Shown here piece by piece: positions 8,050 to 64,000 of a stretch of DNA of 64,000 nucleotides. The position numbers and the translations under genes are program-made. The notes under the pieces were generated by a model. That model ran no database searches. It was not told the DNA's origin and saw nothing but the letters and a program-made list of their open reading frames with translations. Within the stretch, counting starts at the first letter, position 1. Every line of letters starts with the position of its first letter. This DNA comes from Paraphysomonas bandaiensis. Taxonomy: Eukaryota; Protista; Chrysophyceae. The stretch is taken from assembly GCA_965644295.1 (NCBI GenBank), contig CBFFRP010000296.1, forward strand, positions 345,946-409,945, given 5' to 3'.

Positions 8050-8564
8050 TGCTGTGGATGTATTGAGTTACCCACTCCGCACTGGTCAATACCCCTTTAA
8101 CAATACAAACTCTATATACTCTAATGGCAGTGTCTGATAGTGTTCTGAGAGGTATGAGTGTGAGGGGCTGGAGCTGAGCTGACATGAAGATGAACATGTG
8201 CACGTGAAGATGATGATGTGCTCCGAGCTCTTCGGACTACACACCACACACCCGATAAGATATCCAATCAACACTATAAATATCGTGGTTCTATGATATA
8301 ATTGGTTAAGCACTCTATATACAAAAGTACGTATTGGTGGTCCCGTCCTACGTGTGTATTCCCGAGTATACCACTTGTAGTGCTCAGTCCGTTAACGTTA
8401 CGGCACATATGATCCATACAGCATACAGAGTACTCCACATGACCCACGTACATAGACTTGCCTCCAATATAGCCAGCGATCCCGCATCTTCATGAACAAA
8501 CTCCTGTAAGCGATCTCCAACACCTTCAACTCATATTTTGGAGCTAGCAAGTAAAGAAGGATTG

Positions 8565-26325: not shown

Positions 26326-31530
<5,205 letters not shown>

Positions 31531-42456: not shown

Positions 42457-42992
42457 TGTACCCACTTGAATTACAAACAAATGTCAATTGTTCAAATGAA
42501 TCAATATAAACTTGTTGTATGTGATGAACACACCTCCTCAAGTCCACACTGACACTGAGCTGAGTAGAAGCAACAGCAGACCAATATTTGACGGCTCTTT
42601 CTGGACATCATCATGATCTCAAAAATACACTCTTGTATGGGAATTTTCAGATATCCAGCACCCTAGATACACAGCCGTATAGTACGGTATACGGTTTGTA
42701 TACCTTTACAGCAGGACAATCTTGTAGGAGGGAAGGAATACCGCAGCATAAATACTACCATATATATGCAGAGTTTCAGTGAGGGGATGGGTGAGTAGTA
42801 GCCAAGCATGAAGTTTCAGTGCCCTGCAGAGCCCTGAGGCAAGATTACATAGAGACCTACTCGTTCTTTAATATATATACGTATACATGCGACGCACTCA
42901 TCGTATCACGTTTCTGTAATGGCTACGCATATGTTCCGCCTCTACTATCTTTTCAGACATGCGTATTGAACATTCGCAGCTGTTTTAAACTC

Positions 42993-45900
42993 ATGCAAAG
43001 ACTAGTTTGGCTATTATGTGCGTGTATGATGTGCGTCTGGAGGTGTGGTATGTCATACTCACATACAGGTACGCGCATTCCTTGTTCCCTGCCTTTTCAC
43101 TTATATATGTACGACATTAGGTCCAATGACGCATATTCGAAGAGAATTAACTGAGGCTGTCCTGGCTATGGATTTGCCTCCAACTGATTTAAATTTAAGC
43201 TGCACACAGACGTGTTCACCCTCACTCACGAATGTATCGTCCTATGACTTTTGCAAAGGGGTTATTGTTCTTGCGAATTGTAGTTATGAAGAAGTTGCGA
43301 CCTATTCATGCAACACTGACAGCTGTTTGAGAAACTGTAGTCAAGACGTAACATGTTTCTTGGAATCAGCAGCTGAAGTACTGTGCCCAATACTCATCAA
43401 TGCCGAATTAATTCCAACAACGTCACCCATTATAAGTCCAGCGTCTGCACCAACAGTGTCCCCTACATCGAACCCGACGTTTACTCCAAGTGTAGATCCA
43501 AGTGGTGTTCCTAGCATGGTACCTAGTGGTGAGCCGAGTTCATCACCAGTGACGTCACATCCTACGGTGGATGGGGAAACGAACGCACCCACTCATTCTC
43601 CAACGGCTCGGCCTACACGAAGTCCGACAGTGCATCCTACATCACTACCTACTGTATTTCCTACTCTGAGTCCAACGGGTGTTCCCAGTAGTATTCCCAG
43701 TAGGGTTCCGACAAGTGTTCCGACGTTGAGTCCGACAGCGACTCCAACCCACGATCCGACGTCAGTACCGAGTGTATCTCCTACGGTGGATCCAACGCGT
43801 TCCCCAACTGTATCTCCAACAGTGTCCCCTACATCGAACCCGACTTTTACTCCAAGTGGTGTTCCTAGCATGGTACCTAGTGGTGAGCCGAGTTCATCAC
43901 CAGTGACGTCACATCCTACGGTGGATGGGGAAACGAACGCACCCACTCATTCTCCAACGGCTCGGCCTACACGAAGTCCGACAGTGCATCCTACATCACT
44001 ACCTACTGTATTTCCTACTCTGAGTCCAACGGGTGTTCCCAGTAGTATTCCCAGTAGGGTTCCGACAAGTGTTCCGACGTTGAGTCCGACAGCGACTCCA
44101 ACCCACGATCCGACGTCAGTACCGAGTATATCTCCTACGGTGGATCCAACGCGTTCCCCAACTGTATCTCCAACAGTGTCCCCTACATCGAACCCGACTT
44201 TTACTCCAAGTGTAGATCCAAGTGGTGTTCCTAGCATGGTACCTAGTGGTGAGCCGAGTTCATCACCAGTGACGTCACATCCTACGGTGGATGGGGAAAC
44301 GAACGCACCCACTCATTCTCCAACGGCTCGGCCTACACGAAGTCCGACAGTGCATCCTACATCACTACCTACTGTATTTCCTACTCTGAGTCCAACGGGT
44401 GTTCCCAGTAGTATTCCCAGTAGGGTTCCGACAAGTGTTCCGACGTTGAGTCCGACAGTGACTCCAACCCACGATCCGACGTCAATACCGAGTGTATCTC
44501 CTACAGTGGATCCAACGCGTTCCCCAACTGTATCTCCAACAGTGTCCCCTACATCGAACCCGACTTTTACTCCAAGTGTAGATCCAAGTGGTGTTCCTAG
44601 CATGGTACCTAGTGGTGAGCCGAGTTCATCACCAGTGACGTCACATCCTACGGTGGATGGGGAAACGAACGCACCCACTCATTCTCCAACGGCTCGGCCT
44701 ACACGAAGTCCGACAGTGCATCCTACATCACTACCTACTGTATTTCCTACTCTGAGTCCAACGGGTGTTCCCAGTAGTATTCCCAGTAGGGTTCCGACAA
44801 GTGTTCCGACGTTGAGTCCGACAGCGACTCCAACCCACGATCCGACGTCAATACCGAGTGTATCTCCTACAGTGGATCCAACGCGTTCCCCAACTGTATC
44901 TCCAACAGTGTCCCCTACATCGAACCCGACTTTTACTCCAAGTGTAGATCCAAGTGGTGTTCCTAGCATGGTACCTAGTGGTGAGCCGAGTTCATCACCA
45001 GTGACGTCACATCCTACGGTGGATGGGGAAACGAACGCACCCACTCATTCTCCAACGGCTCGGCCTACACGAAGTCCGACAGTGCATCCTACATCACTAC
45101 CTACTGTATTTCCTACTCTGAGTCCAACGGGTGTTCCCAGTAGTATTCCCAGTAGGGTTCCGACAAGTGTTCCGACGTTGAGTCCGACAGTGACTCCAAC
45201 CCACGATCCGACGTCAGTACCGAGTGTATCTCCTACAGTGGACCCAACGCGTTCCCCAACTGTATCTCCAACAGTGTCCCCTACATCGAACCCGACTTTT
45301 ACTCCAAGTGTAGATCCAAGTGGTGTTCCTGGCATGGTACCTAGTGGTGAGCCGAGTTCATCACCAGTGACGTCACATCCTACGGTGGATGGGGAAACGA
45401 ACGCACCCACTCATTCTCCAACGGCTCGGCCTACACGAAGTCCGACAGTGCATCCTACATCACTACCTACTGTATGTCCTACTCTGAGTCCAACGGGTGT
45501 TCCCAGTAATATTCCCAGTAGGGTTCCGACAAGTGTTCCGACGTTGAGTCCGACAGTGACTCCAACCCACGATCCGACGTCAGTACCGAGTGTATCTCCT
45601 ACAGTGGATCCAACGCGTTCCCCAACTGTATCTCCAACAGTGTCCCCTACATCGAACCCGACTTTTACTCCAAGTGTAGATCCAAGTGGTGTTCCTAGCA
45701 TGGTACCTAGTGGTGAGCCGAGTTCATCACCAGTGACGTCACATCCTACGGTGGATGGGGAAACGAACGCACCCACTCATTCTCCAACGGCTCGGCCTAC
45801 ACCAAGTCCGACAGTGCATCCTACATCACTACCTACTGTATTTCCTACTCTGAGTCCAACGGGTGTTCCCAGTAGTATTCCCAGTAGGGTTCCGACAAGT

Positions 45901-48900
45901 GTTCCGACGTTGAGTCCGACAGTGACTCCAACCCACGATCCGACGTCAGTACCGAGTGTATCTCCTACAGTGGACCCAACGCGTTCCCCAACTGTATCTC
46001 CAACAGTGTCCCCTACATCGAACCCGACTTTTACTCCAAGTGTAGATCCAAGTGGTGTTCCTAGCATGGTACCTAGTGGTGAGCCGAGTTCATCACCAGT
46101 GACGTCACATCCTACGGTGGATGGGGAAACGAACGCACCCACTCATTCTCCAACGGCTCGGCCTACACCAAGTCCGACAGTGCATCCTACATCACTACCT
46201 ACTGTATTTCCTACTCTGAGTCCAACGGGTGTTCCCAGTAGTATTCCCAGTAGGGTTCCGACAAGTGTTCCGACGTTGAGTCCGACAGTGACTCCAACCC
46301 ACGATCCGACGTCAGTACCGAGTGTATCTCCTACAGTGGACCCAACGCGTTCCCCAACTGTATCTCCAACAGTGTCCCCTACATCGAACCCGACTTTTAC
46401 TCCAAGTGTAGATCCAAGTGGTGTTCCTAGCATGGTACCTAGTGGTGAGCCGAGTTCATCACCAGTGACGTCACATCCTACGGTGAATGGGGAAACGAAC
46501 GCACCCACTCATTCTCCAACGGCTCGGCCTACACGAAGTCCGACAGTGCATCCTACATCACTACCTACTGTATGTCCTACTCTGAGTCCAACGGGTGTTC
46601 CCAGTAGTATTCCCAGTAGGGTTCCGACAAGTGTTCCGACGTTGAGTCCGACAGTGACTCCAACCCACGATCCGACGTCAGTACCGAGTGTATCTCCTAC
46701 AGTGGACCCAACGCGTTCCCCAACTGTATCTCCAACAGTGTCCCCTACATCGAACCCGACTTTTACTCCAAGTGTAGATCCAAGTGGTGTTCCTAGCATG
46801 GTACCTAGTGGTGAGCCGAGTTCATCACCAGTGACGTCACATCCTACGGTGAATGGGGAAACGAACGCACCCACTCATTCTCCAACGGCTCGGCCTACAC
46901 CAAGTCCGACAGTGCATCCTACATCACTACCTACTGTATTTCCTACTCTGAGTCCAACGGGTGTTCCCAGTAGTATTCCCAGTAGGGTTCCGACAAGTGT
47001 TCCGACGTTGAGTCCGACAGTGACTCCAACCCACGATCCGACGTCAGTACCGAGTGTATCTCCTACAGTGGATCCAACGCGTTCCCCAACTGTATCTCCA
47101 ACAGTGTCCCCTACATCGAACCCGACTTTTACTCCAAGTGTAGATCCAAGTGGTGTTCCTAGCATGGTACCTAGTGGTGAGCCGAGTTCATCACCAGTGA
47201 CGTCACATCCTACGGTGGATGGGGAAACGAACGCACCCACTCATTCTCCAACGGCTCGGCCTACACGAAGTCCGACAGTGCATCCTACATCACTACCTAC
47301 TGTATTTCCTACTCTGAGTCCAACGGGTGTTCCCAGTAGTATTCCCAGTAGGGTTCCGACAAGTGTTCCGACGTTTAGTCCGACAGCGACTCCAACCCAC
47401 GATCCGACGTCAATACCGAGTGTATCTCCTACAGTGGATCCAACGCGTTCCCCAACTGTATCTCCAACAGTGTCCCCTACATCGAACCCGACGTTTACTC
47501 CAAGTGTAGATCCAAGTGGTGTTCCTAGCATGGTACCTAGTGGTGAGCCGAGTTCATCACCAGTGACGTCACATCCTACGGTGGATGGGGAAACGAACGC
47601 ACCCACTCATTCTCCAACGGCTCGGCCTACACGAAGTCCGACAGTGCATCCTACATCACTACCTACTGTATTTCCTACTCTGAGTCCAACGGGTGTTCCC
47701 AGTAGTATTCCCAGTAGGGTTCCGACAAGTGTTCCGACGTTGAGTCCGACAGCGACTCCAACCCACGATCCGACGTCAGTACCGAGTGTATCTCCTACAG
47801 TGGACCCAACGCGTTCCCCAACTGTATCTCCAACAGTGTCCCCTACATCGAACCCGACTTTTACTCCAAGTGTAGATCCAAGTGGTGTTCCTAGCATGGT
47901 ACCTAGTGGTGAGCCGAGTTCATCACCAGTGACGTCACATCCTACGGTGGATGGGGAAACGAACGCACCCACTCATTCTCCAACGGCTCGGCCTACACGA
48001 AGTCCGACAGTGCATCCTACATCACTACCTACTGTATGTCCTACTCTGAGTCCAACGGGTGTTCCCAGTAGTATTCCCAGTAGGGTTCCGACAAGTGTTC
48101 CGACGTTGAGTCCGACAGCGACTCCAACCCACGATCCGACGTCAGTACCGAGTGTATCTCCTACAGTGGACCCAACGCGTTCCCCAACTGTATCTCCAAC
48201 AGTGTCCCCTACATCGAACCCGACTTTTACTCCAAGTGTAGATCCAAGTGGTGTTCCTAGCATGGTACCTAGTGGTGAGCCGAGTTCATCACCAGTGACG
48301 TCACATCCTACGGTGGATGGGGAAACGAACGCACCCACTCATTCTCCAACGGCTCGGCCTACACGAAGTCCGACAGTGCATCCTACATCACTACCTACTG
48401 TATTTCCTACTCTGAGTCCAACGGGTGTTCCCAGTAGTATTCCCAGTAGGGTTCCGACAAGTGTTCCGACGTTGAGTCCGACAGCGACTCCAACCCACGA
48501 TCCGACGTCAGTACCGAGTGTATCTCCTACAGTGGACCCAACGCGTTCCCCAACTGTATCTCCAACAGTGTCCCCTACATCGAACCCGACGTTTACTCCA
48601 AGTGTAGATCCAAGTGGTGTTCCTAGCATGGTACCTAGTGGTGAGCCGAGTTCATCACCAGTGACGTCACATCCTACGGTGGATGGGGAAACGAACGCAC
48701 CCACTCATTCTCCAACGGCTCGGCCTACACGAAGTCCGACAGTGCATCCTACATCACTACCTACTGTATTTCCTACTCTGAGTCCAACGGGTGTTCCCAG
48801 TAGTATTCCCAGTAGGGTTCCGACAAGTGTTCCGACGTTGAGTCCGACAGCGACTCCAACCCACGATCCGACGTCAGTACCGAGTGTATCTCCTACAGTG

Positions 48901-51900
48901 GATCCAACGCGTTCCCCAACTGTATCTCCAACAGTGTCCCCTACATCGAACCCGACGTTTACTCCAAGTGTAGATCCAAGTGGTGTTCCTAGCATGGTAC
49001 CTAGTGGTGAGCCGAGTTCATCACCAGTGACGTCACATCCTACGGTGGATGGGGAAACGAACGCACCCACTCATTCTCCAACGGCTCGGCCTACACGAAG
49101 TCCGACAGTGCATCCTACATCACTACCTACTGTATTTCCTACTCTGAGTCCAACGGGTGTTCCCAGTAGTATTCCCAGTAGGGTTCCGACAAGTGTTCCG
49201 ACGTTGAGTCCGACAGCGACTCCAACCCACGATCCGACGTCAGTACCGAGTGTATCTCCTACAGTGGACCCAACGCGTTCCCCAACTGTATCTCCAACAG
49301 TGTCCCCTACATCGAACCCGACGTTTACTCCAAGTGTAGATCCAAGTGGTGTTCCTAGCATGGTACCTAGTGGTGAGCCGAGTTCATCACCAGTGACGTC
49401 ACATCCTACGGTGGATGGGGAAACGAACGCACCCACTCATTCTCCAACGGCTCGGCCTACACGAAGTCCGACAGTGCATCCTACATCACTACCTACTGTA
49501 TTTCCTACTCTGAGTCCAACGGGTGTTCCCAGTAGTATTCCCAGTAGGGTTCCGACAAGTGTTCCGACGTTGAGTCCGACAGCGACTCCAACCCACGATC
49601 CGACGTCAGTACCGAGTGTATCTCCTACAGTGGACCCAACGCGTTCCCCAACTGTATCTCCAACAGTGTCCCCTACATCGAACCCGACGTTTACTCCAAG
49701 TGTAGATCCAAGTGGTGTTCCTAGCATGGTACCTAGTGGTGAGCCGAGTTCATCACCAGTGACGTCACATCCTACGGTGGATGGGGAAACGAACGCACCC
49801 ACTCATTCTCCAACGGCTCGGCCTACACGAAGTCCGACAGTGCATCCTACATCACTACCTACTGTATTTCCTACTCTGAGTCCAACGGGTGTTCCCAGTA
49901 GTATTCCCAGTAGGGTTCCGACAAGTGTTCCGACGTTGAGTCCGACAGCGACTCCAACCCACGATCCGACGTCAGTACCGAGTGTATCTCCTACAGTGGA
50001 CCCAACGCGTTCCCCAACTGTATCTCCAACAGTGTCCCCTACATCGAACCCGACGTTTACTCCAAGTGTAGATCCAAGTGGTGTTCCTAGCATGGTACCT
50101 AGTGGTGAGCCGAGTTCATCACCAGTGACGTCACATCCTACGGTGGATGGGGAAACGAACGCACCCACTCATTCTCCAACGGCTCGGCCTACACCAAGTC
50201 CGACAGTGCATCCTACATCACTACCTACTGTATTTCCTACTCTGAGTCCAACGGGTGTTCCCAGTAGTATTCCCAGTAGGGTTCCGACAAGTGTTCCGAC
50301 GTTGAGTCCGACAGCGACTCCAACCCACGATCCGACGTCAGTACCGAGTGTATCTCCTACAGTGGACCCAACGCGTTCCCCAACTGTATCTCCAACAGTG
50401 TCCCCTACATCGAACCCGACGTTTACTCCAAGTGTAGATCCAAGTGGTGTTCCTAGCATGGTACCTAGTGGTGAGCCGAGTTCGTCACCAGTGACGTCAC
50501 ATCCTACGGTGGATGGGGAAACGAACGCACCCACTCATTCTCCAACGGCTCGGCCTACACGAAGTCCGACAGTGCATCCTACATCACTACCTACTGTATT
50601 TCCTACTCTGTGTCCAACGGGTGTTCCCAGTAGTATTCCCAGTAGGGTTCCGACAAGTGTTCCGACGTTGAGTCCGACAGCGACTCCAACCCACGATCCG
50701 ACATCAGTACCGAGTGTATCTCCTACAGTGGATCCAACGCGTTCCCCAACTGTATCTCCAACAGTGTCCCCTACATCGAACCCGACGTTTACTCCAAGTG
50801 TAGATCCAAGTGGTGTTCCTAGCATGGTACCTAGTGGTGAGCCGAGTGAATCTCCGACGTCACCGACGCTAGCTCCATCTATTGATTATAGATTTGTTAA
50901 TGTGTCTACATATTTGGTTCGTGGTGGTGTAGTTGGAGTTGAGTTTGGGCAATATTTAGGCGATTCTGGTGTGTTTGTGAGTAATGGTACTACAGTACTC
51001 TTTATAGTTGGTGTCAGTGTGGATTCATATGATTCCACCGCATTCCACCAAGTTTTGATGGTGGCTGGTGGCTCAGTATCAGGCAGTCGGGATGGCAGTT
51101 TTGATAGCAGTGACGCTTTATTTGCGAGTGTTAGTAGGATGAAATACGACGATATATCGAGCGTATTGTACGCATGCAGCGACGAGAGTAATGTGATTCG
51201 AATACTTGATTTGGAAGGACGACATGTGCATACTATCTCTGATGTGGGTGGTAATCGATTGTTGTTTAGCAGTCGTCAAGGATACAGCACGGGAGGTCGA
51301 TTTCCTGGTATGGATATTGACAAGGCAGGTTCGTATTTATATGTGACGGATCGCACGAACTTGTACAACCTTACTCGAGACACGACATCTTCATCGATAT
51401 CAGCGTATGTTCGTGAGGAATATGTAGCATTGACACAATTCAAGGCAGCTAATTCGTGGCCTGAGAATGTGTACATATTTGGTGTTGCTTCTGTCGAGAG
51501 TCACGGCATGGTGTATGTGACAGTGTCCTTGGGTTTGAATCTGTTGTTGAAGATACCAATGCGTGTGGCGCACTATTCGGAGATATCAGTGTTAGCGGGC
51601 AATCCAAGTGAAGTGTATGGGGGTATTTCTGATGATACTCACACCCCTTACCTTCAGGACGGGTTTGGCACAGATGCGTTACTGGCTTTTCCATCGAGTA
51701 TAGCATATGACCCTGTGGAGGATGCTCTGTACTTCACAGAGAGTTTTACGGAGTTTAGCGATATTATCGATGATTTATATGTTGGCTCTATGACGGTTCG
51801 GAAGTACTCTGTGTACTCTGGCTATGTGAGTACGTATGCTGGTTATGACTTTTCTCAAAATCGCGATGAGCAAGGTTCATATTTCACCGCTGGTGGTTAT

Positions 51901-54900
51901 CAGGACGGTTGGGCTGGAGTAGCTCAGTTTTCGTATCCACTAACGATATGTTATGCGTTCTCTCATTTGAACCGGCCAGTGTTGTTTTTAACGGATTTCT
52001 TCAACGATGCAATTCGTGTGGTATATACTGGTATTGGGGCTGTGCCAGCATTGTCAACCACGTCGCCCACAATGCGGCCAACGCGTCTCCCAACATCTTT
52101 CCCTACGCAAGAGCCAACAATTACTCTAACATCACATCCCACCATCCGACCGAGTTTGAGTCCTACATCCACTCCTACACAAGTCCCATCTGTATCTCCG
52201 ACATTGATACCTTCATATTTACCGACGACGTATCCCAGTACTACACCAAGTGGTGTTCCGACAAGGGTTCCTAGTGATGAACCTAGTCTACGTCCTACAA
52301 CATCACGTCCTACGGTAGATGGAGAAACTGTGCAGCCGACACCCCTCCCCACATTACATCCTACACGTAGTCCTACACAGCATCCGACATCGAATCCCAG
52401 TTGCAGCCCAACCTTTCGACCAACCTTACCACCTACTTTCAATCCCACCCGAATTCCAACAACAATACCAACTTCATTACCCACGTCGAATCCGTCGTTT
52501 GCTCCAACATTATCCCCTACATCGAACCCGACGTTTACTCCAAGTGTAGATCCAAGTGGTGTTCCTAGCATGGTACCTAGTGGTGAGCCGAGTTCGTCAC
52601 CAGTGACGTCACATCCTACGGTGGATGGGGAAACGAACGCACCCACTCATTCTCCAACGGCTCGGCCTACACGAAGTCCGACAGTGCATCCTACATCACT
52701 ACCTACTGTATTTCCTACTCTGTGTCCAACGGGTGTTCCCAGTAGTATTCCCAGTAGGGTTCCGACAAGTGTTCCGACGTTGAGTCCGACAGCGACTCCA
52801 ACCCACGATCCGACATCAGTACCGAGTGTATCTCCTACAGTGGATCCAACGCGTTCCCCAACTGTATCTCCAACAGTGTCCCCTACATCGAACCCGACGT
52901 TTACTCCAAGTGTAGATCCAAGTGGTGTTCCTAGCATGGTACCTAGTGGTGAGCCGAGTGAATCTCCGACGTCACCGACGCTAGCTCCATCTATTGATTA
53001 TAGATTTGTTAATGTGTCTACATATTTGGTTCGTGGTGGTGTAGTTGGAGTTGAGTTTGGGCAATATTTAGGCGATTCTGGTGTGTTTGTGAGTAATGGT
53101 ACTACAGTACTCTTTATAGTTGGTGTCAGTGTGGATTCATATGATTCCACCGCATTCCACCAAGTTTTGATGGTGGCTGGTGGCTCAGTATCAGGCAGTC
53201 GGGATGGCAGTTTTGATAGCAGTGACGCTTTATTTGCGAGTGTTAGTAGGATGAAATACGACGATATATCGAGCGTATTGTACGCATGCAGCGACGAGAG
53301 TAATGTGATTCGAATACTTGATTTGGAAGGACGATATGTGCATACTATCTCTGATGTGGGTGGTAATCGATTGTTGTTTAGCAGTCGTCAAGGATACAGC
53401 ACGGGAGGTCGATTTCCTGGTATGGATATTGACAAGGCAGGTTCGTATTTATATGTGACGGATCGCACGAACTTGTACAACCTTACTCGAGACACGACAT
53501 CTTCATCGATATCAGCGTATGTTCGTGAGGAATATGTAGCATTGACACAATTCAAGGCAGCTAATTCGTGGCCTGAGAATGTGTACATATTTGGTGTTGC
53601 TTCTGTCGAGAGTCACGGCATGGTGTATGTGACAGTGTCCTTGGGTTTGAATCTGTTGTTGAAGATACCAATGCGTGTGGCGCACTATTCGGAGATATCA
53701 GTGTTAGCGGGCAATCCAAGTGAAGTGTATGGGGGTATTTCTGATGATACTCACACCCCTTACCTTCAGGACGGGTTTGGCACAGATGCGTTACTGGCTT
53801 TTCCATCGAGTATAGCATATGACCCTGTGGAGGATGCTCTGTACTTCACAGAGAGTTTTACGGAGTTTAGCGATATTATCGATGATTTATATGTTGGCTC
53901 TATGACGGTTCGGAAGTACTCTGTGTACTCTGGCTATGTGAGTACGTATGCTGGTTATGACTTTTCTCAAAATCGCGATGAGCAAGGTTCATATTTCACC
54001 GCTGGTGGTTATCAGGACGGTTGGGCTGGAGTAGCTCAGTTTTCGTATCCACTAACGATATGTTATGCGTTCTCTCATTTGAACCGGCCAGTGTTGTTTT
54101 TAACGGATTTCTTCAACGATGCAATTCGTGTGGTATATACTGGTATTGGGGCTGTGCCAGCATTGTCAACCACGTCGCCCACAATGCGGCCAACGCGTCT
54201 CCCAACATCTTTCCCTACGCAAGAGCCAACAATTACTCTAACATCACATCCCACCATCCGACCGAGTTTGAGTCCTACATCCACTCCTACACAAGTCCCA
54301 TCTGTATCTCCGACATTGATACCTTCATATTTACCGACGACGTATCCCAGTACTACACCAAGTGGTGTTCCGACAAGGGTTCCTAGTGATGAACCTAGTC
54401 TACGTCCTACAACATCACGTCCTACGGTAGATGGAGAAACTGTGCAGCCGACACCCTTCCCCACATTACATCCTACACGTAGTCCTACACAGCATCCGAC
54501 ATCGAATCCCAGTTGCAGCCCAACCTTTCGACCAACCTTACCACCTACTTTCAATCCCACCCGAATTCCAACAACAATACCAACTTCATTACCCACGTCG
54601 AATCCGTCGTTTGCTCCAACATTATCCCCTACATCGAACCCGACGTTTACTCCAAGTGTAGATCCAAGTGGTGTTCCTAGCATGGTACCTAGTGGTGAGC
54701 CGAGTTCATCACCAGTGACGTCACATCCTACGGTGGATGGGGAAACGAACGCACCCACTCATTCTCCAACGGCTCGGCCTACACGAAGTCCGACAGTGCA
54801 TCCTACATCACTACCTACTGTATTTCCTACTCTGAGTCCAACGGGTGTTCCCAGTAGTATTCCCAGTAGGGTTCCGACAAGTGTTCCGACGTTGAGTCCG

Positions 54901-57900
54901 ACAGCGACTCCAACCCACGATCCGACGTCAGTACCGAGTGTATCTCCTACAGTGGATCCAACGCGTTCCCCAACTGTATCTCCAACAGTGTCCCCTACAT
55001 CGAACCCGACGTTTACTCCAAGTGTAGATCCAAGTGGTGTTCCTAGCATGGTACCTAGTGGTGAGCCGAGTGAATCTCCGACGTCACCGACGCTAGCTCC
55101 ATCTATTGATTATAGATTTGTTAATGTGTCTACATATTTGGTTCGTGGTGGTGTAGTTGGAGTTGAGTTTGGGCAATATTTAGGCGATTCTGGTGTGTTT
55201 GTGAGTAATGGTACTACAGTACTCTTTATAGTTGGTGTCAGTGTGGATTCATATGATTCCACCGCATTCCACCAAGTTTTGATGGTGGCTGGTGGCTCAG
55301 TATCAGGCAGTCGGGATGGCAGTTTTGATAGCAGTGACGCTTTATTTGCGAGTGTTAGTAGGATGAAATACGACGATATATCGAGCGTATTGTACGCATG
55401 CAGCGACGAGAGTAATGTGATTCGAATACTTGATTTGGAAGGACGATATGTGCATACTATCTCTGATGTGGGTGGTAATCGATTGTTGTTTAGCAGTCGT
55501 CAAGGATACAGCACGGGAGGTCGATTTCCTGGTATGGATATTGACAAGGCAGGTTCGTATTTATATGTGACGGATCGCACGAACTTGTACAACCTTACTC
55601 GAGACACGACATCTTCATCGATATCAGCGTATGTTCGTGAGGAATATGTAGCATTGACACAATTCAAGGCAGCTAATTCGTGGCCTGAGAATGTGTACAT
55701 ATTTGGTGTTGCTTCTGTCGAGAGTCACGGCATGGTGTATGTGACAGTGTCCTTGGGTTTGAATCTGTTGTTGAAGATACCAATGCGTGTGGCGCACTAT
55801 TCGGAGATATCAGTGTTAGCGGGCAATCCAAGTGAAGTGTATGGGGGTATTTCTGATGATACTCACACCCCTTACCTTCAGGACGGGTTTGGCACAGATG
55901 CGTTACTGGCTTTTCCATCGAGTATAGCATATGACCCTGTGGAGGATGCTCTGTACTTCACAGAGAGTTTTACGGAGTTTAGCGATATTATCGATGATTT
56001 ATATGTTGGCTCTATGACGGTTCGGAAGTACTCTGTGTACTCTGGCTATGTGAGTACGTATGCTGGTTATGACTTTTCTCAAAATCGCGATGAGCAAGGT
56101 TCATATTTCACCGCTGGTGGTTATCAGGACGGTTGGGCTGGAGTAGCTCAGTTTTCGTATCCACTAACGATATGTTATGCGTTCTCTCATTTGAACCGGC
56201 CAGTGTTGTTTTTAACGGATTTCTTCAACGATGCAATTCGTGTGGTATATACTGGTATTGGGGCTGTGCCAGCATTGTCAACCACGTCGCCCACAATGCG
56301 GCCAACGCGTCTCCCAACATCTTTCCCTACGCAAGAGCCAACAATTACTCCAACATCACATCCCACCATCCGACCGAGTTTGAGTCTTACATCCACTCCT
56401 ACACAAGTCCCATCTGTATCTCCGACATTGATACCTTCATATTTACCGACGTCATATCCCAGTACTACACCAAGTGGTGTTCCGACAAGGGTTCCTAGTG
56501 ATGAACCTAGTCTACGTCCTACAACATCACGTCCTACAACATCACGTCCTACGGTAGATGGAGAAACTGTGCAGCCGACACCCTTCCCCACATTACATCC
56601 TACACGTAGTCCTACACAGCATCCGACATCGAATCCCAGTTGCAGCCCAACCTTTCGACCAACCTTACCACCTACTTTCAATCCCACCCGAATTCCAACA
56701 ACAATACCAACTTCATTACCCACGTCGAATCCGTCGTTTGCTCCAACATTATCCCCTACATCGAACCCGACGTTTACTCCAAGTGTAGATCCAAGTGGTG
56801 TTCCTAGCATGGTACCTAGTGGTGAGCCGAGTTCATCACCAGTGACGTCACATCCTACGGTGGATGGGGAAACGAACGCACCCACTCATTCTCCAACGGC
56901 TCGGCCTACACTAAGTCCGACAGTGCATCCTACATCACTACCTACTGTATTTCCTACTCTGAGTCCAACGGGTGTTCCCAGTAGTATTCCCAGTAGGGTT
57001 CCGACAAGTGTTCCGACGTTGAGTCCGACAGCGACTCCAACCCACGATCCGACGTCAGTACCGAGTGTATCTCCAACAGTGTCCCCTACATCGAACCCGA
57101 CGTTTACTCCAAGTGTAGATTCAAGTGGTGTTCCTAGCATGGTACCTAGTGGTGAGCCGAGTGAATCTCCGACGTCACCGACGCTAGCTCCATCTATTGA
57201 TTATAGATTTGTTAATGTGTCTACATATTTGGTTCGTGGTGGTGTAGTTGGAGTTGAGTTTGGGCAATATTTAGGCGATTCTGGTGTGTTTGTGAGTAAT
57301 GGTACTACAGTACTCTTTATAGTTGGTGTCAGTGTGGATTCATATGATTCCACCGCATTCCACCAAGTTTTGATGGTGGCTGGTGGCTCAGTATCAGGCA
57401 GTCGGGATGGCAGTTTTGATAGCAGTGACGCTTTATTTGCGAGTGTTAGTAGGATGAAATACGACGATATATCGAGCGTATTGTACGCATGCAGCGACGA
57501 GAGTAATGTGATTCGAATACTTGATTTGGAAGGACGACATGTGCATACTATCTCTGATGTGGGTGGTAATCGATTGTTGTTTAGCAGTCGTCAAGGATAC
57601 AACACGGGAGGTCGATTTCCTGGTATGGATATTGACAAGGCAGGTTCGTATTTATATGTGACGGATCGCACGAACTTGTACAACCTTACTCGAGACACGA
57701 CATCTTCATCGATATCAGCGTATGTTCGTGAGGAATATGTAGCATTGACACAATTCAAGGCAGCTAATTCGTGGCCTGAGAATGTGTACATATTTGGTGT
57801 TGCTTCTGTCGAGAGTCACGGCATGGTGTATGTGACAGTGTCCTTGGGTTTGAATCTGTTGTTAAAGATACCAATGCGTGTGGCGCACTATTCGGAGATA

Positions 57901-60900
57901 TCAGTGTTAGCGGGCAATCCAAGTGAAGTGTATGGGGGTATTTCTGATGATACTCACACCCCTTACCTTCAGGACGGGTTTGGCACAGATGCGTTACTGG
58001 CTTTTCCATCGAGTATAGCATATGACCCTGTGGAGGATGCTCTGTACTTCACAGAGAGTTTTACGGAGTTTAGCGATATTATCGATGATTTATATGTTGG
58101 CTCTATGACGGTTCGGAAGTACTCTGTGTACTCTGGCTATGTGAGTACGTATGCTGGTTATGACTTTTCTCAAAATCGCGATGAGCAAGGTTCATATTTC
58201 ACCGCTGGTGGTTATCAGGACGGTTGGGCTGGAGTAGCTCAGTTTTCGTATCCACTAACGATATGTTATGCGTTCTCTCATTTGAACCGGCCAGTGTTGT
58301 TTTTAACGGATTTCTTCAACGATGCAATTCGTGTGGTATATACTGGTATTGGGGCTGTGCCAGCATTGTCAACCACGTCGCCCACAATGCGGCCAACGCG
58401 TCTCCCAACATCTTTCCCTACGCAAGAGCCAACAATTACTCTAACATCACATCCCACCATCCGACCGAGTTTGAGTCCTACATCCACTCCTACACAAGTC
58501 CCATCTGTATCTCCGACATTGATACCTTCATATTTACCGACGACGTATCCCAGTACTACACCAAGTGGTGTTCCGACAAGGGTTCCTAGTGATGAACCTA
58601 GTCTACGTCCTACAACATCACGTCCTACGGTAGATGGAGAAACTGTGCAGCCGACACCCCTCCCCACATTACATCCTACACGTAGTCCTACACAGCATCC
58701 GACATCGAATCCCAGTTGCAGCCCAACCTTTCGACCAACCTTACCACCTACTTTCAATCCCACCCGAATTCCAACAACAATACCAACTTCATTACCCACG
58801 TCGAATCCGTCGTTTGCTCCAACATTATCCCCTACATCGAACCCGACGTTTACTCCAAGTGTAGATCCAAGTGGTGTTCCTAGCATGGTACCTAGTGGTG
58901 AGCCGAGTTCATCACCAGTGACGTCACATCCTACGGTGGATGGGGAAACGAACGCACCCACTCATTCTCCAACGGCTCGGCCTACACGAAGTCCGACAGT
59001 GCATCCTACATCACTACCTACTGTATTTCCTACTCTGAGTCCAACGGGTGTTCCCAGTAGTATTCCCAGTAGGGTTCCGACAAGTGTTCCGACGTTGAGT
59101 CCGACAGCGACTCCAACCCACGATCCGACGTCAGTACCGAGTGTATCTCCTACAGTGGATCCAACGCGTTCCCCAACTGTATCTCCAACAGTGTCCCCTA
59201 CATCGAACCCGACGTTTACTCCAAGTGTAGATCCAAGTGGTGTTCCTAGCATGGTACCTAGTGGTGAGCCGAGTGAATCTCCGACGTCACCGACGCTAGC
59301 TCCATCTATTGATTATAGATTTGTTAATGTGTCTACATATTTGGTTCGTGGTGGTGTAGTTGGAGTTGAGTTTGGGCAATATTTAGGCGATTCTGGTGTG
59401 TTTGTGAGTAATGGCACTACAGTACTCTTTATAGTTGGTGTCAGTGTGGATTCATATGATTCCACCGCATTCCACCAAGTTTTGATGGTGGCTGGTGGCT
59501 CAGTATCAGGCAGTCGGGATGGCAGTTTTGATAACAGTGACGCTTTATTTGCGAGTGTTAGTAGGATGAAATACGACGATATATCGAGCGTATTGTACGC
59601 ATGCAGCGACGAGAGTAATGTGATTCGAATACTTGATTTGGAAGGACGACATGTGCATACTATCTCTGATGTGGGTGGTACTCGATTGTTGTTTAGCAGT
59701 CGTCAAGGATACAACACGGGAGGTCGATTTCCTGGTATGGATATTGACAAGGCAGGTTCGTATTTATATGTGACGGATCGCACGAACTTGTACAACCTTA
59801 CTCGAGACGCGACATCTTCATCGATATCAGCGTATGTTCGTGAGGAATATGTAGCATTGACACAATTCAAGGCAGCTAATTCGTGGCCTGAGAATGTGTA
59901 CATATTTGGTGTTGCTTCTGTCGAGAGTCACGGCATGGTGTATGTGACAGTGTCCTTGGGTTTGAATCTGTTGTTAAAGATACCAATGCGTGTGGCGCAC
60001 TATTCGGAGATATCAGTGTTAGCGGGCAATCCAAGTGAAGTGTATGGGGGTATTTCTGATGATACTCACACCCCTTACCTTCAGGACGGGTTTGGCACAG
60101 ATGCGTTACTGGCTTTTCCATCGAGTATAGCATATGATCCTGTGGAGGATGCTCTGTACTTCACAGAGAGTTTTACGGAGTTTAGCGATATTATCGATGA
60201 TTTATATGTTGGCTCTATGACGGTTCGGAAGTACTCTGTGTACTCTGGCTATGTGAGTACGTATGCTGGTTATGACTTTTCTCAAAATCGCGATGAGCAA
60301 GGTTCATATTTCACCGCTGGTGGTTATCAGGACGGTTGGGCTGGAGTAGCTCAGTTTTCGTATCCACTAACGATATGTTATGCGTTCTCTCATTTGAACC
60401 GGCCAGTGTTGTTTTTAACGGATTTCTTCAACGATGCAATTCGTGTGGTATATACTGGTATTGGGGCTGTGCCAGCATTGTCAACCACGTCGCCCACAAT
60501 GCGGCCAACGCGTCTCCCAACATCTTTCCCTACGCAAGAGCCAACAATTACTCTAACATCACATCCCACCATCCGACCGAGTTTGAGTCCTACATCCACT
60601 CCTACACAAGTCCCATCTGTATCTCCGACATTGATACCTTCATATTTACCGACGACATATCCCAGTACTACACCAAGTGGTGTTCCGACAAGGGTTCCTA
60701 GTGATGAACCTAGTCTACGTCCTACAACATCACGTCCTACGGTAGATGGAGAAACTGTGCAGCCGACACCCTTCCCCACATTACATCCTACACGTAGTCC
60801 TACACAGCATCCGACATCGAATCCCAGTTGCAGCCCAACCTTTCGACCAACCTTACCACCTACTTTCAATCCCACCCGAATTCCAACAACAATACCAACT

Positions 60901-63900
60901 TCATTACCCACGTCGAATCCGTCGTTTGCTCCAACATTATCCCCTACATCGAACCCGACATTTACTCCAAGTGTAGATCCAAGTGGTGTTCCTAGCATGG
61001 TACCTAGTGGTGAGCCGAGTTCATCACCAGTGACGTCACATCCTACGGTGGATGGGGAAACGAACGCACCCACTCATTCTCCAACGGCTCGGCCTACACG
61101 AAGTCCGACAGTGCATCCTACATCACTACCTACTGTATTTCCTACTCTGAGTCCAACGGGTGTTCCCAGTAGTATTCCCAGTAGGGTTCCGACAAGTGTT
61201 CCGACGTTGAGTCCGACAGCGACTCCAACCCATGATCCGACGTCAGTACCGAGTGTATCTCCTACAGTGGATCCAACGCGTTCCCCAACTGTATCTCCAA
61301 CAGTGTCCCCTACATCGAACCCGACGTTTACTCCAAGTGTAGATCCAAGTGGTGTTCCTAGCATGGTACCTAGTGGTGAGCCGAGTGAATCTCCGACGTC
61401 ACCGACGCTAGCTCCATCTATTGATTATAGATTTGTTAATGTGTCTACATATTTGGTTCGTGGTGGTGTAGTTGGAGTTGAGTTTGGGCAATATTTAGGC
61501 GATTCTGGTGTGTTTGTGAGTAATGGTACTACAGTACTCTTTATAGTTGGTGTCAGTGTGGATTCATATGATTCCACCGCATTCCACCAAGTTTTGATGG
61601 TGGCTGGTGGCTCAGTATCAGGCAGTCGGGATGGCAGTTTTGATAGCAGTGACGCTTTATTTGCGAGTGTTAGTAGGATGAAATACGACGATATATCGAG
61701 CGTATTGTACGCATGCAACGACGAGAGTAATGTGATTCGAATACTTGATTTGGAAGGACGACATGTGCATACTATCTCTGATGTGGGTGGTAATCGATTG
61801 TTATTTAGCAGTCGTCAAGGATACAACACGGGAGGTCGATTTCCTGGTATGGATATTGACAAGGCAGGTTCGTATTTATATGTGACGGATCGCACGAACT
61901 TGTACAACCTTACTCGAGACACGACATCTTCATCGATATCAGCGTATGTTCGTGAGGAATATGTAGCATTGACACAATTCAAGGCAGCTAATTCGTGGCC
62001 TGAGAATGTGTACATATTTGGTGTTGCTTCTGTCGAGAGTCACGGCATGGTGTATGTGACAGTGTCCTTGGGTTTGAATCTGTTGTTGAAGATACCAATG
62101 CGTGTGGCGCACTATTCGGAGATATCAGTATTAGCGGGCAATCCAAGTGAAGTGTATGGGGGTATTTCTGATGATACTCACACCCCTTACCTTCAGGACG
62201 GGTTTGGCACAGATGCGTTACTGGCTTTTCCATCGAGTATAGCATATGACCCTGTGGAGGATGCTCTGTACTTCACAGAGAGTTTTACGGAGTTTAGCGA
62301 TATTATCGATGATTTATATGTTGGCTCTATGACGGTTCGGAAGTACTCTGTGTACTCTGGCTATGTGAGTACGTATGCTGGTTATGACTTTTCTCAAAAT
62401 CGCGATGAGCAAGGTTCATATTTCACCGCTGGTGGTTATCAGGACGGTTGGGCTGGAGTAGCTCAGTTTTCGTATCCACTAACGATATGTTATGCGTTCT
62501 CTCATTTGAACCGGCCAGTGTTGTTTTTAACGGATTTCTTCAACGATGCAATTCGTGTGGTATATACAGGTATTGGGGCTGTGCCAGTATTGTCAACCAC
62601 GTCGCCCACAATGCGGCCAACGCGTCTCCCAACATCTTTCCCTACGCAAGAGCCACCGATTACTCTAACATCACATCCCACCATCCGACCGAGTTTGAGT
62701 CCTACATCCACTCCTACACAAGTCCCATCTGTATCTCCGACATTGATACCTTCATATTTACCGACGTCATATCCCAGTACTACACCAAGTGGTGTTCCGA
62801 CAAGGGTTCCTAGTGATGAACCTAGTCTACGTCCTACAACATCACGTCCTACGGTAGATGGAGAAACTGTGCAGCCGACACCCTTCCCCACATTACATCC
62901 TACACGTAGTCCTACACAGCATCCGACATCGAATCCCAGTTGCAGCCCAACCTTTCGACCAACCTTACCACCTACTTTCAATCCCACCCGAATTCCAACA
63001 ACAATACCAACTTCATCACCCACGTCGAATCCGTCGTTTGCTCCAACATTATCCCCTACATCGAACCCGACGTTTACTCCAAGTATAGATCCAAGTGGTG
63101 TTCCTAGCATGGTACCTAGTGGTGAGCCGAGTTCATCACCAGTGACGTCACATCCTACGGTGGATGGGGAAACGAACGCACCCACTCATTCTCCAACGGC
63201 TCGGCCTACACGAAGTCCGACAGTGCATCCTACATCACTACCTACTGTATTTCCTACTCTGTGTCCAACGGGTGTTCCCAGTAGTATTCCCAGTAGGGTT
63301 CCGACAAGTGTTCCGACGTTGAGTCCGACAGCGACTCCAACCCACGATCCGACGTCAGTACCGAGTGTATCTCCTACAGTGGATCCAACGCGTTCCCCAA
63401 CTGTATCTCCAACAGTGTCCCCTACATCGAACCCGACGTTTACTCCAAGTGTAGATCCAAGTGGTGTTCCTAGCATGGTACCTAGTGGTGAGCCGAGTGA
63501 ATCTCCGACGTCACCGACGCTAGCTCCATCTATTGATTATAGATTTGTTAATGTGTCTACATATTTGGTTCGTGGTGGTGTAGTTGGAGTTGAGTTTGGG
63601 CAATATTTAGGCGATTCTGGTGTGTTTGTGAGTAATGGTACTACAGTACTCTTTATAGTTGGTGTCAGTGTGGATTCATATGATTCCACCGCATTCCACC
63701 AAGTTTTGATGGTGGCTGGTGGCTCAGTATCAGGCAGTCGGGATGGCAGTTTTGATAGCAGTGACGCTTTATTTGCGAGTGTTAGTAGGATGAAATACGA
63801 CGATATATCGAGCGTATTGTACGCATGCAGCGACGAGAGTAATGTGATTCGAATACTTGATTTGGAAGGACGATATGTGCATACTATCTCTGATGTGGGT

Positions 63901-64000
63901 GGTAATCGATTGTTGTTTAGCAGTCGTCAAGGATACAGCACGGGAGGTCGATTTCCTGGTATGGATATTGACAAGGCAGGTTCGTATTTATATGTGACGG
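42993..64000 (+). CDS. Giant secreted mucin-like protein with tandem NHL-type beta-propellers, >6,970 aa, runs off window
   Basis: Exon 1 42993-43047 (MQRLVWLLCACMMCVWRC), GT-AG intron 43048-43120, exon 2 from 43121 with no stop seen to 64000; Cys-rich head, Pro/Thr/Ser repeats, repeated globular domains. Confidence 0.9.
43450..50848 (+). repeat. Coding tandem array of 366-bp (122-aa) units, 19 full plus 2 partial
   Basis: Unit THSPTARPTRSPTVHPTSLPTVFP...SGEPSSSPVTSHPTVDGETNAP; 366-bp spacing visible in the antisense ORF starts; first unit has a 12-bp deletion. Confidence 0.97.
50535..64000 (+). repeat. Higher-order coding repeat of 2112 bp (704 aa): beta-propeller plus mucin linker, 6 complete and 1 partial
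   Basis: Propeller starts (ATTGATTATAGA) at 50881, 52993, 55105, 57196, 59308, 61420, 63532; one spacing is 2091 bp (+15 and -36 bp indels). Confidence 0.97.

What the first reader, a model, noticed from the sequence alone, without database searches (positions are those of the whole stretch)
42993..64000. Hidden giant surface protein: long mucin stalk followed by at least 7 beta-propeller beads
Seen: one + strand frame open for >20.8 kb after a short signal-peptide exon, missed by the ORF track. Layout is signal peptide, roughly 95-aa head with 8 Cys, about 2,490-aa Pro/Thr/Ser stalk, then repeats of [about 385-aa globular domain + about 320-aa PTS linker]. Established: AG...DG.G..A.F..P..IAYD...LY..D..N.IR motifs are typical of NHL-repeat propellers, and PTS tracts form O-glycosylated extended rods. 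Inference: a multivalent adhesin, prey-capture filament or gel/lorica scaffold; at an assumed 0.25-0.3 nm per residue the stalk alone would reach about 0.6-0.75 micrometre. I do not recognise this architecture from any characterised protein.
Basis: partly seen in the sequence, partly recalled or inferred. Interest (0 to 1): 0.85.

Follow-up and report, generated by a model that had tools for sequence, protein, structure and literature searches.

The report
Giant diatom propeller-array surface receptor
This is a real, transcribed gene for an enormous (about 10,000-residue) membrane-anchored surface glycoprotein of a marine diatom: at least eight NHL beta-propellers on proline/threonine-rich spacers above a polycystin-like REJ-GAIN base, an architecture found in no characterised protein.

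Summary
One + frame is open from 43030 to the window end (6,990 codons). The window end is also the end of contig C296. An RNA contig shows a 52-nt GT..AG intron (43069-43120) that joins ATG 42993, a signal-peptide exon, in frame to the giant exon.

The layout is signal peptide, Cys-rich head, a stalk of about 20 x 122-aa Pro/Thr/Ser units, then 704-aa units of one globular domain plus a PT linker. The window holds six full globular domains and one cut copy. AlphaFold (pLDDT 88) with Foldseek shows the globular domain is a six-bladed NHL-type propeller.

The missing C-terminus is very probably on contig C369. C369 starts in frame with an eighth propeller, 100% identical over about 810 nt. It continues through a Cys-rich region, a REJ domain, a GAIN-fold domain, one transmembrane helix and a TPR tail. 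A paralogue on contig C2 carries the whole plan in one 7,050-codon frame.

The genome has silicon-transporter genes, so the organism is probably a diatom, and about 90 REJ loci. So this is a receptor-like, membrane-anchored protein, not a prey-capture filament or lorica. Its ligand and function are unknown, and its copy number is uncertain. The scan's first readers noted related REJ giants elsewhere in this genome.

The parts
42945..42992 (+). Minimum 5' UTR. It contains a 9-codon upstream ORF (ATG 42959 to TAA 42986-42988).
   Evidence: RNA-type contig of run X10 begins at 42945. Sequence read.
42993..43068 (+). Exon 1. It encodes MQRLVWLLCACMMCVWRCGMSYSHT plus the first base of a Gly codon. 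It is a probable signal peptide, with a hydrophobic core VWLLCACMMCV.
   Evidence: The spliced contig 42945-43066|43119-43260 keeps ATG 42993 in frame. Paralogue C2 has the same structure: a signal-peptide exon followed by a phase-1 intron.
43069..43120 (+). Phase-1 intron, 52 nt, GT..AG.
   Evidence: Joint in run X10, 'skips 52, GT..AG (cut +2)'. Introns of 50-52 nt are also seen in the neighbouring gene.
43121..43449 (+). Cys-rich head of about 110 aa, with 9 Cys and 4 N-x-S/T sequons. It has no Pfam match.
   Evidence: All 8 Cys in the aligned stretch are conserved in the head of paralogue C2. RNA contigs cover 43119-43478.
43450..50847 (+). Distal Pro/Thr/Ser/Val rod: a 366-nt (122-aa) unit x 20.2 copies at 99% identity.
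   Evidence: Tandem Repeats Finder; composition. Unit-length contigs are present in two metatranscriptomes and one transcriptome.
50881..52050 (+). NHL-type six-bladed beta-propeller 1.
   Evidence: AlphaFold pLDDT 88, pTM 0.90. Foldseek matches NHLRC2, SOQ1 and teneurin NHL domains at E down to 2e-12.
52051..52992 (+). PT linker 1, about 313 aa. The first roughly 165 aa are a distinct PT sequence and the rest is stalk-type units.
   Evidence: PF04886 PT repeat, E 5e-26; alignment to the stalk unit.
52993..54162 (+). Propeller 2.
55105..56274 (+). Propeller 3. The linker after it is 7 aa shorter than the others.
57196..58365 (+). Propeller 4.
59308..60477 (+). Propeller 5.
61420..62589 (+). 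Propeller 6.
63532..63999 (+). Propeller 7, first 156 residues only. It is cut by the end of contig C296, which is the window end.

Best explanation
The window holds the N-terminal 7,000 or so residues of one gene for a type I, single-pass surface glycoprotein of at least about 9,900 residues, in an organism that is probably a marine diatom.

From the membrane outwards the parts are:
- a cytoplasmic tail with a TPR module and an acidic, Ser-rich end;
- one transmembrane helix;
- a GAIN-fold domain that lacks the HL-T/S self-cleavage motif;
- a REJ domain, a beta-rich region and a Cys-rich region;
- at least eight NHL-type six-bladed propellers, each separated by about 315 residues of Pro/Thr/Ser spacer;
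- a Pro/Thr/Ser rod of about 2,470 residues;
- a small eight-cysteine head at the tip.

Shown here: the gene, its splice, its repeats, the two folds, the domain order and the family.

Inferred:
- The spacers are O-glycosylated and extended, so the ectodomain could reach a micrometre or more. That would be far enough to pass the cell coat and silica wall.
- The identical propellers bind a repeated extracellular ligand (a glycan polymer or surface protein) multivalently.
- Binding or pulling is reported through the membrane-proximal REJ-GAIN module to partners recruited by the TPR tail, as in polycystin-1, sea-urchin REJ and adhesion-GPCR ectodomains.

It is one of three such propeller-array genes, within an expansion of about 90 REJ-domain receptor genes in this genome.
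For: - Open frame and repeats.
- Transcription and splicing: run X10 has the GT..AG joint 43069-43120, which puts ATG 42993 in frame. Stalk-unit contigs occur in metatranscriptomes X15 and X16 and in transcriptome X18. An X10 contig runs from the stalk unit into the stalk-to-propeller junction sequence.
- Propeller fold: pLDDT 88, pTM 0.90. The best PDB matches are NHL domains of NHLRC2, SOQ1 and teneurins. Language-model neighbours are NHL clusters. The weak sequence hits are true PF01436 NHL proteins.
- Complete plan in one frame: paralogue C2:146915-168064 has head, stalk, 3 propellers, REJ, GAIN-like region, TM and TPR tail, with the same arrangement of signal-peptide exon and phase-1 intron.
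- Further relatives: C578 has stalk, 6 propellers and the same base. Metagenome relatives P0001, P0002 and P0006 share the base, and P0001 even shares the C-terminal ...RSFSKML.
- Genome context: at least 7 silicon-transporter loci and about 90 REJ loci.
Against: - The join between C296 and C369 is inferred from sequence identity, frame and paralogue architecture. No read spans it, and an unknown number of units lies between.
- The repeats are 99-100% identical and the assembly broke inside them, so copy numbers may be wrong.
- RNA evidence comes from assembled contigs only. The 5' exon contig has depth about 4, and nothing shows one full-length transcript.
- No signal-peptide predictor was available.
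- O-glycosylation, surface location, ligand and signalling are all untested.
- Pfam's NHL models do not reach their thresholds on the propeller.
- The GAIN model rests on six sequences (pLDDT 75).
Confidence: 0.62

Rival explanations
1. Shed structural or adhesive mucilage protein. The membrane anchor would serve only for delivery. The ectodomain would be cut near the membrane, for example at the basic loop SRKRKRRK in the GAIN domain, and released as a micrometre-long glycoprotein. That fibre would cross-link exopolymer, link cells into chains or aggregates, or coat the frustule.
For: - Composition is mucin-like and the length is extreme.
- The tandem identical propellers suit cross-linking of polymers.
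- A dibasic stretch sits exactly where GAIN domains normally self-cleave, in this gene and in C578.
- Teneurin and adhesion-GPCR ectodomains are known to be shed (general knowledge; PMC3278476 abstract for teneurins).
Against: - The dibasic loop is absent in C2, P0002 and P0006.
- The cytoplasmic TPR tail and the C-terminal motif are conserved, which argues for a function inside the cell.
- There are no proteomic data.
Confidence: 0.2
2. Gamete or mating recognition receptor, analogous to the sea-urchin sperm receptor for egg jelly. The propellers would recognise a partner-cell coat polymer, and REJ-GAIN would trigger the response.
For: - The REJ + GAIN + single TM base resembles suREJ1 (my recollection of Moy et al. 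1996).
- A REJ/GPS protein is a positively selected male-gamete candidate in the stramenopile Ectocarpus (PMC4700764).
- The first two blades of the propeller differ strongly between copies and paralogues, while the rest is kept identical.
Against: - Transcripts of the stalk unit occur in ordinary culture transcriptomes and bulk marine metatranscriptomes, where sexual stages are rare.
- About 90 REJ genes is far more than gamete recognition needs.
- No sex-specific expression data were available.
Confidence: 0.1
3. Partly an assembly artefact. The array of near-identical 366-nt and 2,112-nt units would be mis-assembled (copies inflated, collapsed or chimeric), and C296 and C369 would belong to different genes, so the true protein would be much smaller or differently built.
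For: - The contig ends inside the array.
- A metagenome relative's contig also ends inside its array.
- Short-read RNA and DNA contigs collapse the stalk to a single unit.
Against: - Units are not identical; they carry 4-19 private differences and one unit has its own indels, as expected of real copies.
- Only C296 and C369 hold this 100%-identical propeller in the whole assembly.
- Two paralogues show the same giant plan, and one of them is complete within a contig.
Confidence: 0.08

Closest known systems
Sea-urchin sperm receptor for egg jelly (suREJ1) and the polycystin-1 / PKDREJ ectodomain
   Same: Ligand-binding modules sit on top of a REJ domain (PF02010, E 4.7e-34) and a GAIN/GPS-fold domain next to the membrane. 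Like suREJ1 (from memory), there is a single transmembrane helix.
   Different: - There are no C-type lectin, EGF, PKD or LRR modules. Instead there are at least 8 NHL propellers on PT spacers, plus a 2,470-aa PT rod and a Cys head.
- There is no PLAT domain and no 11-TM or channel part.
- The HL-T/S cleavage site is missing.
- The cytoplasmic tail carries a TPR module.
- The protein is about seven times longer than suREJ1.
Adhesion GPCRs (latrophilin, BAI, CELSR) and their GAIN domain
   Different: There is one TM helix instead of seven. There is no HL-T/S autoproteolysis motif and no hormone-receptor domain. Sequence identity is only 9-12%.
NHL-repeat propellers of NHLRC2, SOQ1, teneurins and Bacteroides surface proteins (BT_3476 type)
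   Same: Six-bladed NHL-type propeller (Foldseek E 2e-12 to 1e-8, TM about 0.55-0.6). In teneurins and the Bacteroides proteins it is likewise an extracellular binding module.
   Different: Identity is 14-17%. The Pfam NHL and TEN_NHL models stay below threshold. Here the propeller is repeated in tandem as near-identical copies. There is no YD shell, Trx domain or TRIM context.
Membrane-tethered mucins (e.g. MUC1/MUC4/MUC16 type)
   Same: A very long Pro/Thr/Ser tandem-repeat ectodomain (63% P+T+S) on a single-pass anchor, with a juxtamembrane domain that can act as a breakable joint.
   Different: There is no SEA, VWD or EGF module. Folded propellers are interspersed in the PTS tracts. The family belongs to stramenopiles and has no sequence relation to animal mucins. 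Glycosylation is unproven.

Membership tests
NHL-repeat six-bladed beta-propeller (Pfam PF01436 / PF25021, clan Beta_propeller) | Fold of six four-stranded blades that superposes on solved NHL domains. | tested here: met
   AlphaFold pLDDT 88, pTM 0.90, about 26 strands. Foldseek top hits are NHLRC2 6gc1/6g7w at E 2.4e-12, SOQ1 7djl, and the teneurin NHL domain.
NHL-repeat six-bladed beta-propeller (Pfam PF01436 / PF25021, clan Beta_propeller) | Pfam NHL or TEN_NHL model matched above the gathering score. | tested here: not met
   PF01436 gave no hit. TEN_NHL scored 15.4 bits against a cut-off of 27.1, and SdiA-regulated scored 20 against 21.
NHL-repeat six-bladed beta-propeller (Pfam PF01436 / PF25021, clan Beta_propeller) | Significant sequence similarity to proteins that do carry PF01436. 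| tested here: met
   phmmer hits P0040-P0062 at E 2e-9 to 7e-5. These carry PF01436 at E 1e-14 to 1e-54. ESM Atlas neighbours are NHL clusters.
REJ-domain proteins (PF02010; polycystin-1, PKDREJ, suREJ) | REJ domain above the Pfam cut-off. | tested here: met
   E 4.7e-34, 118 bits against a cut-off of 25, residues 1174-1572 of the C369 frame. It lies on the inferred continuation, not inside the window.
REJ-domain proteins (PF02010; polycystin-1, PKDREJ, suREJ) | For polycystin-1 / PKDREJ proper: a PLAT domain and an 11-TM, channel-like C-terminal part. | tested here: not met
   The 2,328-aa C-terminal frame has only one hydrophobic segment (residues 2043-2061). There is no PLAT or PKD_channel Pfam hit.
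GAIN/GPS domain (adhesion GPCRs, polycystin-1) | GAIN fold: a helical subdomain A plus a beta-sandwich subdomain B, directly before the first TM helix. | tested here: met
GAIN/GPS domain (adhesion GPCRs, polycystin-1) | GPS autoproteolysis motif (CxC-x-HL-T/S) and a match to the Pfam GPS model. | tested here: not met
   The Cys pattern ...C..W...C...TTCxC is present, but it is followed by PASL, PVSF or SSFA instead of HL-T/S. A disordered loop of 10-20 aa precedes the last strand. PF01825 was not reported.
Mucin-like PTS domain | Long tandem repeats dominated by Pro, Thr and Ser. | tested here: met
   20.2 x 122 aa at 99% identity. Composition is P 24%, T 20%, S 20%. PF04886 PT repeat scores E 5e-26 in the linker.
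Mucin-like PTS domain | Dense O-glycosylation giving an extended rod. | not testable with these tools
   This needs glycoproteomics or electron microscopy. The length estimate of 0.25-0.3 nm per residue is an assumption.
Teneurins | Type II topology, EGF repeats, YD-repeat shell and Tox-GHH end. | tested here: not met
   Only the NHL propeller resembles teneurins. The topology is type I, and there are no YD/RHS or EGF Pfam hits.

The most novel reading that the evidence does not exclude
A micrometre-long tether that spans the silica wall and senses force or contact. The propeller array and Cys head would reach outside the frustule and bind polymers, bacteria or neighbouring cells. Tension would be passed down the glycosylated rod to a GAIN domain whose self-cleaving site has been replaced by a protease-accessible basic loop. 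Cleavage or unfolding there would switch the TPR tail's cytoplasmic partners. The roughly 90 REJ-GAIN giants of this diatom would then form a previously unrecognised, combinatorial surface-sensing system, with heads (NHL, LRR, lectin-like) swapped on a common chassis.
Probability: 0.15. Interest if true: 0.85.

Novelty: new variant of a known kind. Interest (0 to 1): 0.66.

Why it matters
Diatoms fix a large share of ocean carbon. How these walled cells sense and stick to surfaces, partners, bacteria and each other is poorly understood at the molecular level.

This gene shows that a diatom builds giant single-pass receptors on the same REJ-GAIN juxtamembrane module that animals use in polycystin-1, sperm egg-jelly receptors and adhesion GPCRs. 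Here the module is topped by tandem NHL propellers on mucin-like spacers. The genome carries about 90 genes on this chassis.

The finding gives concrete, testable objects: a soluble 390-residue propeller, a GAIN domain without the canonical cleavage site, and a TPR tail. These can be used to study diatom surface recognition, aggregation and possibly mating.

It is also a caution for annotation. Such genes are missed or truncated by ORF tracks, and assemblies break inside them. Here C296 ends in the array, and a metagenome relative's contig (P0002) does the same.

Tried and rejected
- Pfam on the head gave nothing meaningful; the only hit was Cytochrom_C1 at E 0.13.
- Pfam on the propeller gave only sub-threshold hits.
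- phmmer of the whole C369 frame against PDB sequences found nothing at E 0.01 or better.
- An ESM Atlas search of the region between the last propeller and REJ gave only weak leads, with a best score of 0.88 for a REJ-containing cluster. That region stays unassigned. One Atlas call failed on length.
- The search for homologous proteins on the C-terminal part returned only distant, unnamed REJ proteins at 24-30% identity. It missed the closer relatives that the exhaustive search had found.
- An HMM of the GAIN region found no match in those distant REJ proteins, so the GAIN model had to rest on six sequences.
- Literature searches for diatom REJ, polycystin or NHL receptors found no description of this family. 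One search was wasted because 'rej' matched 'rejection'.
- I tried to name the species and could not. Run and organism names are coded, and cluster look-ups gave only metagenome sources plus one Mallomonas relative.
- Counting synonymous and non-synonymous differences among stalk units failed, because an indel in the first unit puts fixed-length slices out of register. I report no such ratio for the stalk.
- Depths of assembled contigs were not used for copy number or expression level, as the tool warns against it.
- The prey-capture and lorica readings were rejected because of the silicon-transporter genes and the membrane anchor.

Full report

Yes. A six-frame scan finds one open stretch of 6,990 codons, 43030-63999 on the + strand. 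The next longest in the window is 462 codons. The mechanical ORF list misses it only because it runs off the window end.

- Head: Cys-rich.
- Stalk: a 366-nt (122-aa) unit repeated 20.2 times at 99% identity, 43450-50847, with P 24%, T 20%, S 20% and V 12%.
- Propeller array: a 2,112-nt (704-aa) unit made of a globular domain of about 390 aa and a PT linker of about 313 aa. Globular domains start at 50881, 52993, 55105, 57196, 59308, 61420 and 63532.
- Copy count: six copies are complete. The seventh stops at residue 156 because the window end is the end of contig C296, which is 409,945 bp long.
- Unit differences: the 2,112-nt units differ from each other at 4-19 positions. One unit has its own small indels and is 2,091 nt. 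That is what real, recently homogenised copies look like, rather than an assembler loop.

**2. Is it a gene, and where does it start?**

Public runs hold the stretch, including marine metatranscriptomes and culture transcriptomes. I laid contigs of four runs on 41700-44100, with these results.
- Run X10 behaves as RNA. The neighbouring minus-strand gene appears with two introns removed (42132-42183 and 42380-42429).
- Run X10 has a contig 42945-43066|43119-43260 with a GT..AG joint. Placed on its GT and AG, the intron is 43069-43120 (52 nt).
- With that intron, ATG 42993 is in frame with the giant exon. The product begins MQRLVWLLCACMMCVWRCGMSYSHT-G-PMTHIRR..., with a hydrophobic core typical of a signal peptide. 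I had no predictor to confirm this.
- A 9-codon upstream ORF precedes it.
- Stalk-unit contigs are present in metatranscriptomes X15 and X16 and in transcriptome X18.
- One X10 contig leaves the stalk unit into letters that encode ESPTSPTLAP, which is the stalk-to-propeller junction.

These are assembled contigs, and the 5' one has low depth. They show splicing and presence in RNA libraries. They do not show a full-length transcript.

**3. What is the globular domain?**

Pfam gives only sub-threshold hits: SdiA-regulated at 20 bits against a cut-off of 21, and TEN_NHL at 15.4 against 27.1.

An exhaustive phmmer search of 1.84 billion representative proteins finds only 87 relatives, 37 of them below E 1e-10. 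The close relatives have no Pfam domain. The weak tail consists of genuine PF01436 NHL-repeat proteins.

I predicted the structure with an alignment of 26 family members. AlphaFold gave pLDDT 88 and pTM 0.90, with about 26 strands. Foldseek against the PDB puts NHL domains first:
- NHLRC2 (E 2.4e-12);
- the lumenal NHL domain of SOQ1;
- Bacteroides surface proteins of the BT_3476 type;
- teneurin NHL domains.

ESM Atlas neighbours are NHL clusters. It is a divergent subfamily that Pfam does not model.

**4. Where is the C-terminus?**

A search of the whole assembly finds this propeller at 99-100% identity only on C296 and at the very start of contig C369.

C369 begins in frame, five codons before a propeller. 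The first 340 nt or so of that propeller are only about 60% identical to the window copies. The next 810 nt or so are 100% identical, and the sequence diverges again after the propeller.

The frame continues for 2,328 codons to a TGA. It contains, in order:
- a Cys-rich module;
- a beta-rich region;
- a REJ domain (PF02010, E 4.7e-34);
- a further region of about 450 aa;
- one strongly hydrophobic helix (residues 2043-2061, followed by RRRHHRR);
- a 267-aa tail with a TPR_12 match (E 4e-7) and an acidic, Ser-rich end.

The GPS-type cysteine pattern is visible (C..W...C...TTCxC). The HL-T/S cleavage triplet is absent. In this gene a disordered basic loop, SRKRKRRK, sits between the CxC and the last strand. 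That loop is not conserved in all relatives.

**5. Is the C296-to-C369 join believable?**

No read spans it, so it is an inference. Three things support it.
- Only these two contig ends carry the identical unit.
- The paralogue on C2 (146915-168064) has the complete plan in one 7,050-codon frame: head with the same eight cysteines, PT stalk of about 3,800 aa, three propellers, REJ, GAIN-like region, TM and TPR tail. It is preceded by a classic signal-peptide exon (MSIRLILRLFFLLSGAIKA...) and a phase-1 intron, the same gene structure as here.
- A second paralogue on C578 has a stalk of the same PTVDGET type, six propellers and the same base. Metagenome relatives P0001, P0002 and P0006 share the base, and P0001 shares the terminal ...RSFSKML.

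If the two contigs abut with no further units, the protein has at least 8 propellers and about 9,900 residues. This is my arithmetic.

**6. Organism and family context**

The genome is 62.6 Mb in 669 contigs. It has at least 7 loci matching the silicon-transporter family above its cut-off. One relative of the propeller comes from the stramenopile Mallomonas, and the sequence occurs in marine plankton metatranscriptomes. I infer a marine diatom but could not name the species.

The REJ model hits about 90 loci, nearly all inside open frames of 1,500-7,900 codons.

This propeller subtype occurs in the three giants and in three small single-copy genes on C377, C179 and C418.

First-stage notes of this scan describe other REJ-based giants in the same genome with LRR or lectin-like heads. 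I checked only the REJ count, not those individual notes.

**7. How it most likely works**

Shown: a spliced, secretory-type N-terminus; a PTS rod; tandem NHL propellers on PTS spacers; and, on the inferred continuation, REJ, GAIN, one TM helix and a TPR tail.

Inferred:
- The PTS tracts are O-glycosylated and extended. That is enough to pass a cell coat and silica wall.
- The near-identical propellers would bind a repeated ligand with high avidity.
- By analogy with polycystin-1, suREJ and adhesion GPCRs, the REJ-GAIN module next to the membrane would be the mechanical or proteolytic joint, and the TPR tail would be the cytoplasmic adaptor.

The rivals are a shed mucilage or adhesive fibre, a gamete-recognition receptor (compare the Ectocarpus REJ candidate, PMC4700764), and partial mis-assembly. 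None can be excluded without experiments.

**8. Comparison with what is known**

- The base works like suREJ1 or the polycystin-1 ectodomain and meets the REJ and GAIN-fold criteria.
- It fails the polycystin-1 criteria (PLAT, 11 TM), the GPS cleavage motif and the 7TM of adhesion GPCRs.
- The propeller is an NHL-type fold but does not meet Pfam's thresholds.
- The spacers are mucin-like by composition only.
- I found no paper describing this family. Database names for relatives are 'hypothetical protein' or 'TPR repeat protein'.

I therefore rate it a new variant of known kinds, assembled in an architecture not described before, and part of a large lineage-specific expansion.

**9. Verdict**

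The fold call and the 'unknown architecture' claim are supported. The functional guesses are narrowed to a membrane-anchored, receptor-like adhesin or sensor of a diatom. Copy number, the contig join, glycosylation, location and ligand remain open.

Noticed in passing
window 50881-51220 and equivalents; L011:1-340; C578:54483-62690: Mosaic propellers. In paralogue C578 the six copies are only 39-53% identical over the first 115 residues or so (velcro strand plus blades 1-2), but 98-100% identical over the remaining 275 or so. The last propeller of this gene, on C369, shows the same sharp switch: about 60% and then 100% DNA identity. Either gene conversion stops at a fixed boundary, or two blades are kept diverse while four are homogenised.
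   Followed up: partly
whole genome G000: About 90 loci match the REJ domain above its cut-off, almost all inside open frames of 1,500-7,900 codons. This is a very large expansion of REJ-based giant surface proteins in one diatom genome of about 63 Mb.
   Followed up: partly
L011 residues 1969-1978 (C369), aligned: The loop that replaces the GPS cleavage site carries SRKRKRRK in this gene, DRRHRR in C578 and SSRR in P0001. There is no basic run in C2, P0002 or P0006. It may be a dibasic-protease processing site.
   Followed up: no
window 40800-42620, minus strand: The neighbouring gene encodes a protein whose N-terminus reads like a dinucleotide-binding fold (MGKHVAVIGAGPVG...); I ran no family search on it. 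It has two tiny introns (42132-42183 and 42380-42429). Its contig depth in run X10 is about 140 times that of the giant gene's 5' exon.
   Followed up: partly
window 42959-42988: A 9-codon upstream ORF (ATG...TAA) lies inside the transcribed leader, 5 nt before the main ATG.
   Followed up: no
window 43459-43926 versus 42945-43478: In run X10 the collapsed stalk-unit contig has depth 285, against about 4 for the unique 5' part. That ratio is about 70, more than the roughly 30 stalk-type units assembled. It could mean more copies than assembled, 3' bias or cross-mapping. Contig depths are unreliable.
   Followed up: no
window 56514-56552 and the third 704-aa unit (55105-57195): The third unit is 2,091 nt instead of 2,112. 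It has a 15-nt triplication-like insert (RPTTS repeated) and lacks a 36-nt stretch (VDPTRSPTVSPT) in its stalk-type part.
   Followed up: partly
window 8538-9416 (+): An open frame with a strong Vasohibin match (PF14822, E 2.4e-57), the family of tubulin-detyrosinating peptidases.
   Followed up: no
window 10802-11533 (-), 20580-21968 (-), 28209-31530 (-), 35014-35856 (-): Other genes in the window: a glycosyltransferase family 61 fragment, a PI3/PI4-kinase domain, ABC-transporter membrane domains and an FkbM-type methyltransferase. The GT61 gene is a candidate protein glycosyltransferase, but nothing links it to the giant gene.
   Followed up: no
L025 (ENA metagenome scaffold, P0002): The closest metagenomic relative is also cut by its contig end inside the propeller array. 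Published fragments of this family are systematically N-terminally truncated.
   Followed up: partly
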